A stretch of 64,000 nucleotides of DNA from Squalus acanthias (GCA_030390025.1 CM059427.1:200942001-201006000); one strand, 5' to 3'. Numbered from the stretch's first letter, positions 14,556-27,893 are shown. The notes: a model not told the origin generated them from the sequence alone. Numbers and translations: made by a program.

Positions 14556-14631
14556 ATTGGCTGTTGTGCGACTCACCAGTTGCCGGGGAGAGGTCTCTGG
14601 GTGAGATTGTGTTTTGAAGAAATCAGGTGAC
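14556..14631 (-). promoter_or_regulatory. S-X1-X2-Y-like module 1
   Basis: Minus strand CAATCT-N16-CCCGGCAAC-TGG-TGAGTCG-N8-CCAAT, with E-box CAGGTG at 14624-14629. Confidence 0.65.
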
Positions 14632-14712
14632 GGAAGGTAAATAAATATCCTGCCGCTAATTCAAACCCCCACTCCAGAGACTCGAGCACGTAATCTAGGC
14701 CGACACTCCCAG

Positions 14713-17297
14713 TGCAGTACTGAGGGAGCGCTGCACTGTCGGAGGGGCAGTACTGAGGGAGCACTGCACTGTAGAGGAGCAGTACTGAGGGAGTGCTGCA
14801 CTGTCGGAGGGGCAGTACTGAGGGAGCACTGCACTGTCGGAGGGGCAGTACTGAGGGAGCGCTGCACTGTCAGAGGGGCAGTACTGAGGGAGCACTGCAC
14901 TGTAGAGGAGCAGTACTGAGGGAGCGCTGCACTGTCGGAGGGGCAGTACTGAGGGAGCACTGCACTGTAGAGGAGCAGTACTGAGGGAGTGCTGCACTGT
15001 CGGAGGGGCAGTACTGAGGGAGTGCTGCACTGTCGGAGGGGCAGTACTGAGGGAGCGCTGCACTGTCAGAGGGGCAGTACTGAGGGAGCGCTGCACTGTA
15101 GAGGGGCAGTACTGAGGGAGAGCAGCACTGTCGGAGGGGCAGTACTGAGGGAGCGCTGCACTGTCGGAGGGGCAGTACTGAGGGAGCGCTGCACTGTAGA
15201 GGGGCAGTACTGAGGGAGAGCAGCACTGTCGGAGGGGCAGTACTGAGGGAGTGCTGCACTGTCGGAGGGACAGTACTGAGGGAGTGCCGCACTGTCGGAG
15301 GGGCAGTACTGAGGGAGCGCTGCACTGTCGGAGGGGCAGTACTGAGGGAGCGCTGCACTGTAGAGGGGCAGTGCTGAGGGAGCGCTGCACTGTCAGAGGG
15401 GCAGTACTGAGGGAGAGCAGCACTGTCGGAGGGGCAGTACTGAGGGAGCGCTGCACTGTAGAGGGGCAGTACTGAGGGAGAGCAGCACTGTCGGAGGGGC
15501 AGTACTGAGGGAGCGCTGCACTGTAGAGGGGCAGTACTGAGGGAGAGCAGCACTGTCGGAGGGGCAGTACTGAGGGAGTGCTGCACTGTCGGAGGGGCAG
15601 TACTGAGGGAGAGCAGCACTGTCGGAGGGGCAGTACTGAGGGAGCGCCGCACTGTCGGAGGGGCAGTACTGAGGGAGTGCTGCACTGTCGGAGGGGCAGT
15701 ACTGAGGGAGAGCAGCACTGTCGGAGGGGCAGTACTGAGGGAGCGCCGCACTGTCGGAGGGGCAGTACTGAGGGAGCGCTGCAATGTAGAGGGGCAGTAC
15801 TGAGGGAGCACTGCACTGTAGAGGAGCAGTACTGAGGGAGCGCTGCACTGTAGAGGGGCAGTACTGAGGGAGTGCTGCACTGTCGGAGGGGCAGTACTGA
15901 GGGAGCGCTGCACTGTCGGAGAGGCAGTACTGAGGGAGCGCTGCACTGTCGGAGGGTCAGTACTGAGGGAGTGCTGCACTGTCGGAGGGGCAGTACTGAG
16001 GGAGCGCCGCACTATCGGAGGGGCAGTACTGAGGGAGCGCTGCACTGTAGAGGGGCAGTACTGAGGGAGCGCTGCACTGTAGAGGGGCAGTACTGAGGGA
16101 GCGCTGCACTGTAGAGGGGCAGTACTGAGGGAGTGCTGCACTGTCGGAGGGGCAGTACTGAGGGAGCGCTGCACTGTCGGAGAGGCAGTACTGAGGGAGC
16201 ACTGCACTGTCGGAGGGGCAGTACTGAGGGAGCGCTGCACTGTAGAGGGGCAGTACTGAGGGAGTGCTGCACTGTAGAGGGGCAGTACTGAGGGAGTGCT
16301 GCACTGTCGGAGGGGCAGTACTGAGGGAGCGCTGCACTGTCGGAGAGGCAGTACTGAGGGAGCGCTGCACTGTCGGAGGGTCAGTACTGAGGGAGCGCCG
16401 CACTATCGGAGGGGCAGTACTGAGGGAGCGCTGCACTGTAGAGGGGCAGTACTGAGGGAGCGCTGCACTGTAGAGGGGCAGTACTGAGGGAGCGCTGCAC
16501 TGTAGAGGGGCAGTACTGAGGGAGTGCTGCACTGTCGGAGGGGCAGTACTGAGGGAGCGCTGCACTGTCGGAGAGGCAGTACTGAGGGAGCGCTGCACTG
16601 TCGGAGGGGCAGTACTGAGGGAGCGCTGCACTGTAGAGGGGCAGTACTGAGGGAGCACCGCACTGTCGGAGGGGCAGTACTGAGGGAGCGCTGCACTGTC
16701 GGAGGGACAGTACTGAGCGAGCGCTGCACTGTAGAGGGGCAGTACTGAGGGAGCGCTGCACTGTCGGAGGGGCAGTACTGAGGGAGCGCTGCACTGTCGG
16801 AGGGACAGTACTGAGCTAGCGCTGCACTGTAGAGGGGCAGTACTGAGCGAGCGCTGCACTGTCGGAGGGGCAGTACTGAGGGAGCGCTGCACTGTCGGAG
16901 GGACAGTACTGTGGGAGCGCCGCACTGTCGGAGGGGCGGTACTGAGGGAGCTCCGCACTGTCGGAGGGGCAGTACTGAGGGAGCGCTGCACTGTCGGAGG
17001 GGCAGTACTGAGGGAGCGCTGCACTGTAGAGGGGCAGTACTGAGGGAGTGCTGCACTGTCGGAGGGGCAGTACTGAGGGAGCGCTGCACTGTCGGAGAGG
17101 CAGTACTGAGGGAGCGCTGCACTGTCGGAGGGGCAGTACTGAGGGAGCGCTGCACTGTAGAGGGGCAGTACTGAGGGAGCGCTGCACTGTCGGAGGGGCA
17201 GTACTGAGGGAGCACCGCACTGTCGGAGGGGCAGTACTGAGGGAGCGCTGCACTGTCGGAGGGGCAGTACTGAGGGAGCGCTGCACTGTCGGAGGTG
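14713..17297 (+). repeat. 33/31-bp minisatellite (CAGTACTGAGGGAGCGCTGCACTGTCGGAGGGG) expanded inside a DeuSINE
   Basis: About 80 tandem units flanked by the 5' and 3' parts of the SINE. Confidence 0.95.
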
Positions 17298-25604: not shown

Positions 25605-27280
25605 AAGGGGGAAGGGAGGGTGTTGAAAGGGGGTGTGTGAAGGGGGAGTGAAAGGAGGGTGTTGAAAGGGGGTGTGTGAAGGGGGGTGTGAAGGGGGGGT
25701 GTTGAAAGGGGGTGTGTGAAGGGGGGGTGTGAAGGGGGGTGTTGAAAGGGGGTGTGTGAAGGGAGGGTGTTGAAAGGGGGTGTGTGAAGGGAGGGTGTTG
25801 AAAGGGGGTCTGTGAAGGGGGAGTGAAGGGAGGGTGTTGAAAGGGGGAGTGAAAGGAGGGTGTTGAAAGGGGGTGTGTGAAGGGAGGGTGTTGAAAGGGG
25901 GGTGTGTGAAGGGGGAGTGAATGGACGGTGTTGAAAGGGGGTGTGTGAAGGGGGAGTGAATGGACGGTGTTGAAAGGGGGTGTGTGAAGGGAGGGTGTTG
26001 AAAGGGGGTGTGTGAAGGGGGAGTGAAGGGAGGGTGTTGAAAGGGGGTGTGTGAAGGGGGAGTGAATGGACGGTGTTGAAAGGGGGTCTGTGAAGGGGGA
26101 GTGAAGGGAGGGTGTTGAAAGGGGGTGTGTGAAGGGGGAGTGAAGGGAGGGTGTTGAAAGGGGGTGTGTGAAGGGGGAGTGAAGGGGGTGTGTGAAGGGG
26201 GAGTGAAGGGAGGGTGTTGAAAGGGGGTGTGTGAAGGGGGAGTGAAGGGGGTGTGTGAAGGGGGAGTGAAGGGAGGGTGTTGAAAGGGGGTGTGTGAAGG
26301 GGGTGTGTGAAGGGGGAGTGAAGGGAGGGTGTTGAAAGGGGGTCTGTGAAGGGCGGGTGTTGAAAGGGGGGGTGTGAAGGGGGAGTGAAGGGAGGGTGTT
26401 GAAAGGGGGTGTGTGAAGGGGGAGTGAAGGGGGTGTGTGAAGGGGGAGTGAAGGGAGGGTGTTGAAAGGGGGTGTGTGAAAGGAGGAGTGAAGGGAGGGT
26501 GTTGAAAGGGGGGGTGTGAAGGGGGAGTGAAGGGGATGTGTGAAGGGGGAGTGAAGGGAGGGTGTTGAAAGGGGGTGTGTGAAGGGGAGTGAAGGGAGGG
26601 TGTTGAAAGGGGGTGTGTGAAGGGGAGTGAAGGGAGGGTGTTGAAAGGGGGGGTGTGAAGGGGGAGTGAAGGGGGTGTGTGAAGGGGGAGTGAAGGGAGG
26701 GTGTTGAAAGGGGGTGTGTGAAGGGGAGTGAAGGGAGGGTGTTGAAAGGGGGTGTGTGAAGGGGAGTGAAGGGAGGGTGTTGAAAGGGGGGGTGTGAAGG
26801 GAGGGTGTTGAAAGGGGGGGTGTGAAGGGGGTGTGAAGGGGGGGTGTTGAAAGGGGGAGTGAAGGGAAGGTGTTGAAAGGGGGTGTGTGAAGGGGGAGTG
26901 AAGGGAGGGTGTTGAAAGGGGGTGTGTGAAGGGGGAGTGAAGGGAGGGTGTTGAAAGGGGGTGTGTGAAGGGGGAGTGAAGGGAGGGTGTTGAAAGGGGG
27001 TGTGTGAAGGGAGGGTGAAGGGAGGGTGTTGAAAGGGGGTGTGTGAAGGGGGAGTGAAGGGAGGGTGTTGAAAGGGGGTGTGTGAAGGGAGGGTGAAGGG
27101 GGGGGTGTTGAAAGGGGGTGTGTGAAGGGGGAGTGAAGGGAGGGTGTTGAAAGGGGGTGTGTGAAGGGGGGTGTTGAAAGGGGGTGTGTGAAGGGGGAGT
27201 GAAGGGAGGGTGTTGAAAGGGTGTGTGTGAAGGGGGAGTGAATGGACGGTGTTGAAAGGGGGTGTGTGAAGGGAGGGTGG
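25605..27280 (+). repeat. G-rich compound minisatellite (GTGTTGAAAGGGGGTGTGTGAAGGGGGAGTGAAGGGAGG-like)
   Basis: About 1.7 kb of modular G-run repeats, almost no C on the + strand. Confidence 0.93.
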
Positions 27281-27815
27281 GTTGGGGCATAACTTTGAGG
27301 TTGACCCAAGGCAGCTTTGCAGCAGTGCCTCCATTTCACTCCCAGGAACCTCTGTGACCCGTCTCCAGCCACAAGGCTTCACCCCTCGAACCTGTGCGGA
27401 TCCCCGCTCCCACTTTCGGACCAGGGACATCGGCGCATGAGGAGGCCATTCAGCCCCTGGAGCCTGTACCGCCACTCAATCAGATCATGGCTGATCAAGG
27501 TACACCCCCCCCCCCCCCCAGTTCCCAGCTCCGACCCTCCTTCCTTGCAAGTTGGCCATATCTTGCGTTGGCCGCCCCCTCTCCTCCCCCCGCCCAGCTG
27601 GCCAATTGGGAGCTCTGCTACTGGTGAGGGGCGTCAGACACTGGGAACGACAGGAAAAACTCTTCATTGTTTCCCTGTTCTCAATTCTTGAAGGCGTCTC
27701 TAACGCCTTAAATTTCCTTCAAAAGCAAACAAAAGGCTGACTTGATAACATTGCATAATCATGGTGGGGGAGAGAGAGAAACCAACAACAGCAAAAACCA
27801 CCAAACAAAGCACTG

Positions 27816-27893
27816 GTTGGCCGTCAGAGTGTGAGTCACCAGTCGTTAAGGAAAGGTTGCTTCGTGAGGCTGAGTTTTGGAGAGTCACGTGAT
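27816..27893 (-). promoter_or_regulatory. S-X1-X2-Y-like module 5 (divergent)
   Basis: CAGCCT-N16-CTTAACGAC-TGG-TGACTCA..CCAAC plus GTCACGTGA. Confidence 0.5.

What the first reader, a model, noticed from the sequence alone, without database searches (positions are those of the whole stretch)
14556..27893. Array of five inverted S-X1-X2-Y modules upstream of shark CD74: candidate RFX/CIITA locus-control region
Seen: five co-oriented minus-strand islands in unique DNA among the repeats (14556, 18993, 23399, 23720, 27816) read CA(A/G)(T/C)CT-N16-C(C/T)(C/T)RRCRAC-TGG-TGA(G/C)T..-CCAAT-like. The S-X spacer is 16 nt in all five. X1-to-CCAAT is 18 nt in four and 21 nt in the fifth. Modules 3 and 5 keep the boxes and the S-X spacing while their spacer sequences have diverged from modules 1/2/4, which suggests selection rather than recent copying alone. 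Known: mammalian MHC-I/II and CD74 promoters use S, X1 (RFX5/RFXAP/RFXANK), X2 (CREB/ATF/AP-1) and Y (NF-Y) with a fixed S-X spacing of about 16 bp to recruit CIITA/NLRC5. Inverted distal S'-Y' enhancers occur in the mammalian class II locus, and as I recall CD74's own Y box is reversed relative to class II genes, as here. Inference: a multimerised distal enhanceosome array 8-22 kb upstream drives CD74; I know of no such description in cartilaginous fish.
Basis: partly seen in the sequence, partly recalled or inferred. Interest (0 to 1): 0.9.

Follow-up and report, generated by a model that had tools for sequence, protein, structure and literature searches.

The report
SXY-like enhancer cluster upstream of shark CD74
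Five related 75-base DNA elements that look like the S-X-Y switches controlling antigen-presentation genes in mammals lie 8 to 22 kb upstream of a shark CD74 gene, so they may be its remote enhancers, but nothing here shows that they work.

Summary
Five co-oriented minus-strand modules lie at 14556-14630, 18996-19069, 23399-23472, 23720-23793 and 27816-27892. The S-to-X1 gap is 16 nt in 5 of 5, and the X1-to-pentamer gap is 18 nt in 4 of 5.

Three qualifications:
- Modules 1, 2 and 4 are recent segmental copies, so there are about three independent lineages.
- The Y pentamer is CCAAT in only 3 of 5.
- Module 5's boxes are no better kept than its spacers.

I found a fifth fixed element, an E-box 12-13 nt upstream of S.

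CD74 is confirmed on the + strand, with its ATG at 36253. The modules are therefore 8.4-21.7 kb upstream and inverted. The proximal promoter has an NF-kB-like site and an inverted CCAAT, but no complete S-X-Y.

Compared with mammalian class II modules, the Y box is flipped and about one helical turn closer to X.

Contigs of four CD74-holding runs (RNA by the tool's guess) give no depth over module 3 or over the X1-to-Y part of module 4.

My best reading, at about 0.5, is RFX/NF-Y/CIITA-type distal enhancers of CD74. "Locus control region" is not shown. A genome-wide scan and a cross-species comparison could not be run. The scan's other notes (titles only) report SXY promoters at MHC genes elsewhere in this genome, but not this array.

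The parts
14556..14630 (-). Module M1. E-box-like TCACCTGA 14623-14630, S-like CAATCT 14604-14609, X1 CCCGGCAAC 14579-14587, X2 TGAGTCG 14569-14575, Y CCAAT 14556-14560.
   Evidence: The E-S gap is 13 nt here and 12 nt in the other four.
18996..19069 (-). Module M2, with the same boxes as M1. E 19062-19069, S 19044-19049, X1 19019-19027, X2 19009-19015, Y CCAAT 18996-19000.
23399..23472 (-). Module M3, an old lineage with the best-kept boxes. E TCACGTGA 23465-23472 (GTCACGTGAC with its flanks), S 23447-23452, X1 CCTGACAAC 23422-23430, X2 TGAGTCA 23412-23418, Y CCAAT 23399-23403.
   Evidence: It lies in the unique island 23198-23538. Against M1, boxes are 27/30 and spacers 13/24.
23720..23793 (-). 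Module M4, a copy of the M1/M2 lineage with decayed boxes. E TGACCTGA, X2 TGAGTTG, Y CCGAT.
   Evidence: It is 82-85% identical to M1 and M2 over 119-164 bp.
27816..27892 (-). Module M5, an old lineage and the nearest to CD74. E TCACGTGA 27885-27892, S CAGCCT, X1 CTTAACGAC (weak half-site), X2 TGACTCA, Y CCAAC with a 3-nt longer gap.
   Evidence: It lies in the unique island 27498-27963. Its boxes are no better kept than its spacers (20/30 against 17/24 compared with M1).
14383..14704 (-). Extended duplicated unit around M1: the core, about 130 bp downstream and the head of the adjoining SINE. A 41-bp insertion at about 14500-14542 is specific to this copy.
   Evidence: It is collinear with 23589-24212 through the SINE, which points to segmental duplication at the DNA level.
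18906..19088 (-). Extended duplicated unit around M2.
23589..23866 (-). Extended duplicated unit around M4, lying 321 bp from M3.
35995..36100 (+). CD74 proximal promoter elements: X1/X2-like GCTGAC-AGA-TGACTCC at 35995-36010, NF-kB-like GGGACTTTCC at 36056-36065 and inverted CCAAT (ATTGG) at 36096-36100. There is no complete S-X-Y. A SINE and a 33-bp satellite abut at 35195-35950.
   Evidence: The motif names are by consensus only. The relaxed X1-X2 grammar has 19 hits in the window, so that hit is not significant alone.
36253..36347 (+). CD74 exon 1 coding part: ATG at 36253 and a GT donor at 36348. It carries 31 codons plus 2 nt, and the phase fits exon 2.
   Evidence: tblastn of P0001 residues 6-27 onto 36262-36327 gives 68% identity, E 3e-4. 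Sequence read.
43716..43886 (+). CD74 exon 2 (transmembrane region).
   Evidence: Pfam PF09307 MHC2-interact, E 1.6e-14. Splice sites read.
44781..53380 (+). Further CD74 exons by tblastn: CLIP 44781-44861, 46546-46605, trimerisation 47503-47592 and 49086-49187, second CLIP-like 49883-49984, thyroglobulin-1 53153-53380.

Best explanation
The five elements are paralogous copies of one composite cis-regulatory module of about 75 bp. Its parts are an E-box, an S-like block, a pyrimidine tract with an RFX-type X1 half-site, a TRE/CRE-like X2 and a CCAAT-type Y.

By analogy with the mammalian S-Y module, RFX (RFX5/RFXAP/RFXANK), a bZIP factor and NF-Y would bind cooperatively and recruit CIITA. The intact copies (M1, M2, M3, perhaps M5) would act as orientation-independent distal enhancers of CD74, whose own proximal promoter keeps only NF-kB-like and inverted-CCAAT elements. 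M4 looks like a decaying copy.

The cluster grew by local segmental duplication. Old duplications gave M3, M5 and the ancestor of M1/M2/M4, and recent ones gave M1, M2 and M4. SINE, LINE and satellite insertions then pushed the copies apart and away from the promoter.

Shown here: the sequence anatomy, the paralogy, the position relative to CD74 and the lack of a complete proximal module. Inferred: factor binding, CIITA dependence, enhancer activity and CD74 as the target.
For: - The box order and gaps are identical in all five: S-X1 16 nt, X1-X2 3 nt, E-S 12-13 nt.
- The 16-bp S-X distance and the pyrimidine tract at the 5' side of X match published descriptions of mammalian modules (PMC4374748 and PMC2278383, passages).
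- Homology between the old lineages is confined to about 80-85 bp from the E-box to Y, and the flanks are unalignable.
- M3 keeps boxes better than spacers against M1/M2 (27/30 against 13/24, Fisher p 0.004) and against M5 (23/30 against 10/24, p 0.012).
- A profile of the cores finds no further copy in 64 kb that is 56% repeats. All five lie on one strand within 13.3 kb.
- CD74 lies next to them. In mammals it is a CIITA target with a promoter-proximal S-Y module, and mouse Cd74 has an upstream enhancer plus two intronic enhancers (PMC2677874, PMC2883540, PMC1802633, passages).
- S-Y modules work in both orientations in reporters (PMC1802633).
- The shark proximal promoter has no complete module.
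- Whale shark has CIITA and NLRC5 orthologues (PMC8455134, passage).
- No protein domain (0 of 10 unique stop-free pieces at Pfam threshold) and no Rfam family lies beside the modules.
Against: - The Y pentamer is on the opposite strand to the 'inverted CCAAT' of class II genes (PMC2191494, abstract in the listing).
- It lies only 8 nt from X2. The X-to-Y span is therefore about 10 bp shorter than the human 47-49 bp (PMC4381081). The same paper reports that off-length sites often bind CIITA without regulating.
- CCAAT is lost in M4 and M5, and M5's X1 half-site is weak.
- M5's boxes are no better kept than its spacers.
- The box definitions were made after seeing the alignment, so the Fisher tests are biased.
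- Three of the five are young copies and add no independent support.
- No binding, chromatin or reporter data exist.
- The target could be a gene to the left of the window, toward which the modules point.
- Copy number in the rest of the genome and conservation in other species could not be tested.
Confidence: 0.5

Rival explanations
1. The modules are neutral relics. On this view they are duplicated fragments of an ancestral S-X-Y promoter, of CD74 itself or of a lost neighbouring class II-type gene, that no longer act and are slowly decaying.
For: - M4 has lost E, X2 and Y matches, including a CpG-to-TpG change in X2.
- M5 has CCAAC, a weak X1, and boxes no better kept than spacers.
- M1, M2 and M4 are plain segmental copies that carry a SINE along with them.
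- The region is mostly transposons and satellites.
Against: - Between old lineages only the core of about 80 bp is still alignable, at 73-76% identity, while the flanks are not. That is hard to get without constraint or conversion.
- M3 keeps 27 of 30 box positions against 13 of 24 spacer positions.
- No decayed exon of an MHC-like gene was found. None of the 10 longest unique stop-free pieces reached a Pfam threshold.
Confidence: 0.25
2. The modules are promoters of minus-strand transcripts, such as alternative first exons of a gene left of the window, or non-coding RNAs. In that case S-X-Y sits in its usual place just upstream of a start site that points away from CD74.
For: - The S-to-Y direction points to lower coordinates, as in promoters.
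- M1, M2 and M4 share about 130 bp downstream of Y, with an ATG, an 11-codon frame and a CAG|GT that could be a donor.
- Known targets carry S-Y typically less than 200 bp upstream of the start site (PMC2278383).
Against: - In 4 of 4 runs that hold CD74 exon 2, contig depth is zero over 23282-23475 (M3 and about 120 bp downstream of it) and over 23670-23766 (the X1-to-Y part of M4). Neighbouring repeats are covered.
- No gene-like open frame or domain lies in 1-14.5 kb or between the modules.
- No Rfam family was found.
- Four of the five downstream segments do not fold better than shuffles. The exception, downstream of M3 (z -4.15), is listed under things noticed in passing.
Confidence: 0.15
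3. The core is part of a dispersed repeat, a transposon regulatory region, and has nothing to do with CD74.
For: - The modules lie among SINEs, LINE fragments and satellites.
- M1 and M4 abut the same SINE family.
- The units end in a C-rich, CT-rich tract.
Against: - The SINE family's other copies in the window (3159-3544, 31651-32038, 34858-35190, 42506-42915 and others) stop 20-50 bp short of the core and carry no module.
- There are only five copies in 64 kb, all on one strand within 13.3 kb.
- In four runs with 1.07 to 2.13 million records each, the bins covering the M3 core and most of the M4 core have zero depth at 90% likeness or more, while true repeats beside them are covered.
Confidence: 0.05

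Closest known systems
Mammalian MHC class II S-X-X2-Y (S-Y, W-X-Y) enhanceosome module bound by RFX, CREB and NF-Y, which recruits CIITA
   Same: It is a composite of an upstream S-like block, a pyrimidine tract with an RFX-type X1, an abutting bZIP-type X2 and a CCAAT-family Y. The S-X distance is 16 nt. Gaps are fixed in every copy. The module sits beside a canonical target gene, CD74.
   Different: - The Y pentamer is on the other strand and about 10 bp (one helical turn) closer to X2.
- S to Y spans about 54-57 bp, against 65-70 bp in mammals (PMC2278383 passage).
- X2 is TRE-like (TGAGTCA, TGACTCA) rather than CRE-like.
- An E-box lies at a fixed 12-13 nt upstream of S.
- No binding data exist.
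Distal and intronic S-Y enhancers of the human MHC-II locus and of the CD74 (Ii) gene (Krawczyk et al. 2004 and Moore et al. 1998, as cited in PMC1802633 and PMC2883540; I did not see those two papers themselves)
   Same: There are several S-Y type modules per locus, away from the core promoter, and they act on CD74. Orientation independence has been shown for S-Y modules in reporters (PMC1802633). The mouse Cd74 core promoter has CCAAT and NF-kB elements, like the shark proximal region.
   Different: The mammalian CD74 modules are promoter-proximal and in intron 1. Here all five are 8-22 kb upstream, none was found in intron 1, and the proximal region has no complete module. Three of the five are recent duplicates.
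[quoted passage not shown]
   Same: The S-X distance is 16 bp. The order is X then Y, and the S box is the determinant of specificity.
   Different: The X-Y distance there is 20-22 bp by that paper's motif boundaries. Whether the shark S-like block resembles the NLRC5-type or the CIITA-type S could not be judged, because the logos are in figures and supplements that I could not see.

Membership tests
S-X-X2-Y (S-Y) enhanceosome module | An X1 box (RFX site) with a pyrimidine-rich tract at its 5' side | tested here: met
   All 9 bases before the half-site are pyrimidines in all five modules. The half-site is GGCAAC in M1, M2 and M4, GACAAC in M3 and AACGAC in M5, which is weak. The pyrimidine tract is described in the PMC2278383 passage. 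This is a motif match only, and binding was not tested.
S-X-X2-Y (S-Y) enhanceosome module | An X2 box (CRE/TRE-like bZIP site) directly next to X1 | tested here: met
   TGA(G/C)T(C/T)(G/A) lies 3 nt after X1 in 5 of 5. It is a perfect TRE heptamer in M3 and M5, 6 of 7 in M1 and M2, and 5 of 7 in M4. The matching 3-nt gap in HLA-DRA is recalled, not from a call.
S-X-X2-Y (S-Y) enhanceosome module | An S (W) box at a fixed distance of about 16 bp upstream of X | tested here: inconclusive
   A conserved CA(A/G)(T/C)CT block lies 16 nt upstream of X1 in 5 of 5. The distance agrees with the 16 bp in PMC4374748.
S-X-X2-Y (S-Y) enhanceosome module | A Y box that is an inverted CCAAT, in fixed orientation and spacing (human MHC-II XY motif 47-49 bp; order, orientation and spacing strictly conserved) | tested here: not met
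   The pentamer reads CCAAT on the X strand, the opposite orientation. It lies 8 nt after X2 (11 nt in M5), which is about 10 bp closer by my recalled count for HLA-DRA. It is intact in only 3 of 5. The standard is taken from PMC4381081, PMC1802633 and the PMC2191494 abstract.
S-X-X2-Y (S-Y) enhanceosome module | Occupancy by RFX5/RFXAP/RFXANK, NF-Y and CIITA, and activity that depends on them | not testable with these tools
   This needs ChIP or CUT&RUN and reporter assays. The only related fact seen is that CIITA and NLRC5 orthologues exist in whale shark (PMC8455134 passage).
Promoter-proximal S-Y module | Located typically less than 200 bp upstream of the target's start site | tested here: not met
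   The modules are 8.4-21.7 kb from the CD74 ATG at 36253 and point away from it. In 4 of 4 runs the contig depth is zero directly downstream of M3 (23282-23398) and over M4's X1-to-Y part.
Locus control region | Confers position-independent, copy-number-dependent expression on the linked gene | not testable with these tools
   This is a functional definition that needs transgenes.
Dispersed repeat or transposon fragment | Many copies, both strands, scattered, with the element's own ends | tested here: not met
   Within this window there are five copies, on one strand, within 13.3 kb. The SINE homology stops short of the core. The bins over the M3 core and most of the M4 core have zero contig depth. 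The genome-wide count was not testable.

The most novel reading that the evidence does not exclude
Sharks may use a distinct five-element grammar, E-box, S, X1, X2 and a flipped Y. In it NF-Y sits one helical turn closer to RFX and on the other face. A USF/TFE-type E-box (GTCACGTGAC in M3) is locked 12 nt from S and may couple CIITA/RFX control to a lysosomal or USF-type input. This module has been multiplied into an upstream array with a 4.42-kb period that replaces the promoter-proximal S-Y module of mammalian CD74. If so, it would be the first distal enhanceosome cluster described outside mammals, and a variant of the architecture previously held to be strictly fixed.
Probability: 0.15. Interest if true: 0.7.

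Novelty: new variant of a known kind. Interest (0 to 1): 0.45.

Why it matters
CD74 and MHC class II genes are the textbook case of an enhanceosome with rigid geometry. That geometry has been defined almost wholly in placental mammals.

If the shark modules are bound by RFX, NF-Y and CIITA, three things follow:
- The logic would date to the base of jawed vertebrates.
- The X-Y geometry would be less fixed than thought, since a one-turn shift and a flipped NF-Y site would be tolerated.
- The promoter-proximal module could be replaced by remote copies in a transposon-rich genome.

The five natural variants (intact, Y-less and weak-X1 copies) would give ready-made mutants for reporter tests.

If they are relics, the case is an ordinary example of duplicated regulatory debris.

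Tried and rejected
1. Tandem 4.4-kb unit. The spacing of M1, M2, M3 and M5 is 4440, 4403 and 4420 bp. For two inner points placed uniformly in the span, P is about 1.4e-5 (post hoc, with M4 left out). 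The intervals nevertheless share no collinear homology beyond transposon family members. One LINE pair lies at offset 4421, but its second member is 93% identical to a copy at 48265-49027, so these are independent insertions. I reject a homogenised tandem repeat. The regular spacing stays unexplained.

2. Decayed coding genes between the modules. I checked 10 of 83 unique stop-free pieces, chosen as the longest near modules. None reached a Pfam threshold, and the one sub-threshold hit (DUF7680, E 0.11) is noise.

3. Small RNA genes. Rfam at gathering threshold found 0 matches in 12000-37000. Folding of five downstream segments gave z between -1.14 and +1.14 for four of them. Only the segment downstream of M3 stands out, with z -4.15, owing to a palindrome.

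4. More copies elsewhere in the window, or in CD74 intron 1. None was found by regex or by profile.

No collection here holds shark genomes.

6. Genome-wide scan. This is not possible with the window alone. The search of earlier findings gave titles only.

7. Literature.
- Searches listed no paper describing S-X-Y modules at a cartilaginous-fish CD74. This covers only the held library.
- The Immunogenetics 2019 paper by Dijkstra and Yamaguchi, which may treat CD74 promoters, is not held. Zhu and Jones 1990 is not held either.
- For PMC6523485, PMC7573153, PMC4374748, PMC1802633, PMC7281430, PMC2278383, PMC2883540, PMC2677874, PMC8455134 and PMC4381081 I saw only the passages returned by 'find'.
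- For PMC2191494 I saw only the abstract start in a search listing.
- Supplements were closed and I did not ask for them. The S/X/Y logos and spacing plots in the figures and supplements of PMC4374748 and PMC4381081 may bear on the S-box and X-Y claims.

8. RNA evidence. It covers only 22700-25600 (M3 and M4). No silent control stretch and no CD74 exon was laid alongside.

Full report
WHAT IS THERE

Reading the minus strand at the five stated places shows the same ordered set of short blocks. That figure overstates the case, because the pattern was written from these copies and the copies are related by descent.

The modules span 14556-14630 (M1), 18996-19069 (M2), 23399-23472 (M3), 23720-23793 (M4) and 27816-27892 (M5).
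- The gap from the S-like hexamer to X1 is 16 nt in 5 of 5.
- X1 to X2 is 3 nt (TGG) in 5 of 5.
- X2 to the Y pentamer is 8 nt in four modules and 11 nt in M5.
It is an E-box 12 nt upstream of S (13 nt in M1). It reads TCACGTGA in M3 and M5, TCACCTGA in M1 and M2, and TGACCTGA in M4.

HOW GOOD ARE THE BOXES

- The nine bases before the X1 half-site are all pyrimidines in every copy.
- The half-site is GGCAAC in M1, M2 and M4, GACAAC in M3 and AACGAC in M5.
- X2 is a perfect TRE heptamer in M3 (TGAGTCA) and M5 (TGACTCA). It is one base off in M1 and M2 and two off in M4.
- The pentamer is CCAAT in M1, M2 and M3, CCGAT in M4 and CCAAC in M5.

A relaxed, generic X1-X2 grammar has 19 hits on both strands of the window. 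Only M1, M2 and M3 combine it with a pyrimidine tract and a CCAAT or ATTGG within 40 nt. On sequence alone, three modules look complete, M5 is marginal and M4 looks decayed.

HOW THE COPIES ARE RELATED

M1, M2 and M4 are copies of a unit of about 280-320 bp. The unit holds the core, about 130 bp downstream of Y and, in M1 and M4, the adjoining SINE. M1 and M2 are 91-94% identical, and M4 is 82-85% identical to both. M1 and M4 remain collinear through the SINE (14383-17961 against 23589-24212), once a satellite expansion and an insertion in M1's SINE are allowed for. These are therefore DNA-level segmental duplications.

M3 and M5 are older. Local alignment with 300-bp flanks finds homology of M5 to M2 and M3 only over 79-83 columns, from just upstream of the E-box to just past Y, at 73-76% identity. 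BLAST finds M3 against M1 and M2 only over 37-89 bp. The five are thus about three lineages of one ancestral element.

A profile of the cores finds no sixth copy in the window. The window is 56% self-repeated DNA. The other members of the neighbouring SINE family stop 20-50 bp short of the core and carry no module.

IS THERE A SIGN OF CONSTRAINT

- M3 against M1 or M2 keeps 27/30 box positions and 13/24 spacer positions (Fisher p 0.004).
- M3 against M5 keeps 23/30 and 10/24 (p 0.012).
- M5 against M1 or M2 keeps 20/30 and 17/24 (p 0.78).

With the E-box added, three-way identical columns are 27/38 in boxes and 15/40 in spacers (p 0.0035). The boxes were defined after looking at the alignment, so these p values are generous.

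The stronger hint is that old copies have unalignable flanks but a core that still aligns. This fits selection on the whole core. Gene conversion limited to the core is not excluded.

CD74 AND THE GEOMETRY

Stop-free pieces on the + strand match three Pfam families:
- MHC2-interact in the piece 43645-43923, E 1.6e-14.
- The invariant-chain trimerisation domain in 47422-47604, E 1.7e-5.
- Thyroglobulin-1 in 53150-53386, E 1.2e-14.

A search of 1.84 billion representative proteins with the 56-residue exon 2 peptide gave 5 hits at E up to 0.001. Three of them are full-length CD74-like proteins. tblastn with these placed exon 1 at 36262-36327 (68% identity over 22 residues, E 3e-4). Reading the DNA gives an ATG at 36253 and a GT donor at 36348, with a phase that fits the acceptor before 43716.

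The roughly 280 bp of unique DNA (35976-36252) between a SINE-plus-satellite block and the ATG holds an NF-kB-like decamer (36056-36065), an inverted CCAAT (36096-36100) and one X1/X2-like 16-mer (35995-36010). It holds no complete, properly spaced S-X-Y.

Between M5 and the promoter, only about 2.8 kb is not repeated within the window. This is my sum from the segments listed. The present distances are therefore largely transposon and satellite bloat.

TRANSCRIPTS

Fourteen runs hold CD74 exon 2 or part of it. None is on record as RNA, and eight are RNA by the tool's guess. The part beside it, 22700-25600, was then laid with four of the fourteen runs (X1, X3, X5, X6), all as contigs.

In 4 of 4 runs the depth is zero in bins 23282-23378, 23379-23475 and 23670-23766. 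These bins cover M3 with the 120 bp downstream of it and the X1-to-Y part of M4. The repeats on either side are covered.

One contig of run X1 lies without a difference on unique DNA at 25404-25536. At least that run is therefore from this species or a very close one.

This argues against abundant stable transcripts starting at M3 or M4, and against the core being a transcribed high-copy repeat. It is weak evidence all the same:
- Contigs lose rare RNAs.
- RNA is a guess.
- No control stretch was laid.
- M1, M2 and M5 were not examined.

COMPARISON WITH WHAT IS KNOWN

The following comes from passages returned by 'find'.
- The mammalian S-Y module is a 65-70 bp composite, tightly constrained in sequence and architecture. 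It has a pyrimidine tract at the 5' side of X and usually lies less than 200 bp from the start site (PMC2278383).
[quoted passage not shown] It works in both orientations in reporters. Further S-Y enhancers exist in the Ii gene and the MHC-II locus (PMC1802633).
- S lies 16 bp and Y 20-22 bp from the X motif in NLRC5-type modules (PMC4374748).
- Human MHC-II XY motifs are 47-49 bp long and CD74's is 48 bp. CIITA-regulated sites keep whole-turn phasing, and sites of other lengths often bind without regulating (PMC4381081).
- Human CD74 has a promoter-proximal S-Y module (PMC2677874).
- Mouse Cd74 has a core promoter with TATA, Sp1, CCAAT and NF-kB elements, an upstream class II-like enhancer and two intronic enhancers that bind CIITA (PMC2883540).
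- The class II Y box is an inverted CCAAT (PMC2191494, abstract in the listing).
- Whale shark has CIITA and NLRC5 orthologues (PMC8455134).

Against this standard the shark modules agree in these respects:
- the S-X distance;
- the pyrimidine tract;
- the X1-X2 abutment;
- the choice of neighbouring gene.

They differ in the Y box, which is flipped and about one helical turn closer. That count rests on my recalled figure of about 18 nt from X2 to the pentamer in HLA-DRA. They also differ in position and in the extra E-box.

I therefore do not file them as members of the mammalian S-Y family in the strict sense. I read them as working like it, at a confidence of about 0.5.

RIVALS

I weigh three rival readings:
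- Neutral relics of duplicated promoter fragments (0.25). This is favoured by the decay of M4 and M5 and by the recent copying.
- Minus-strand promoters (0.15). This is favoured by orientation and by the shared downstream segment with a possible short first exon. It is weakened and by the absence of any gene-like feature.
- A dispersed repeat (0.05).

UNEXPLAINED

The spacing M1-M2-M3-M5 is 4440, 4403 and 4420 bp, with no shared interval content.

VERDICT

The S-X-Y-like reading is reasonable. The claim of a locus control region is not supported by any data here. The kind of element is known from mammals, so this is at most a new variant. Interest is moderate.

Noticed in passing
window 23465-23472, 27885-27892, 14623-14630, 19062-19069, 23786-23793: An E-box lies at a fixed 12 nt (13 nt in M1) upstream of the S-like block in all five modules. 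It is CACGTG-type in the two old copies M3 and M5 (GTCACGTGAC with flanks in M3). It is CACCTG-type in M1 and M2, and it is broken in M4.
   Followed up: partly
window 14571, 19011, 23414, 27834 (X1 positions): The spacing is near-equal at 4440, 4403 and 4420 bp once M4 is set aside, yet the intervals share no collinear sequence. It is unexplained.
   Followed up: partly
window 35995-36100: The CD74 proximal promoter holds an X1/X2-like GCTGAC-AGA-TGACTCC, a GGGACTTTCC decamer and an ATTGG. This resembles the NF-kB plus CCAAT core promoter described for mouse Cd74. The X-like hit is not significant on its own.
   Followed up: partly
window 23250-23387 (minus strand): An imperfect palindrome of about 20 bp lies just downstream of the M3 Y box. 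As RNA it folds far better than shuffles (z -4.15, 0 of 200 shuffles as good). The other four downstream segments do not.
   Followed up: no
window 49883-49984; proteins P0001, P0002: The second CLIP-like stretch after the trimerisation domain was noted earlier on this window. It is also present in two CD74-like representative proteins from other sources. The window piece aligns to P0001 residues 214-247 (E 0.033). It therefore looks like a shared feature rather than a peculiarity of this gene.
   Followed up: partly
window 25404-25536: One 165-nt contig of run X1 matches unique intergenic DNA without a difference, at depth 7. This is either low-level transcription or DNA carry-over in a run guessed to be RNA.
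   Followed up: no
window 14714-17295, 21857-22609, 35195-35873, 63566-64000: A 33-bp satellite is expanded inside or beside copies of one SINE family, in both orientations. One array abuts the CD74 promoter.
   Followed up: no
window 44014-44027: An X1/X2-like AGTAAC-C-TGAGTCA lies on the + strand in CD74 intron 2. It has no properly spaced Y and is probably chance.
   Followed up: no
window 12950-13489 (minus strand): A 180-residue open frame lies in DNA that is unique within the window. By eye it looks like a transposon endonuclease domain, but it has no Pfam match at E up to 1.
   Followed up: partly
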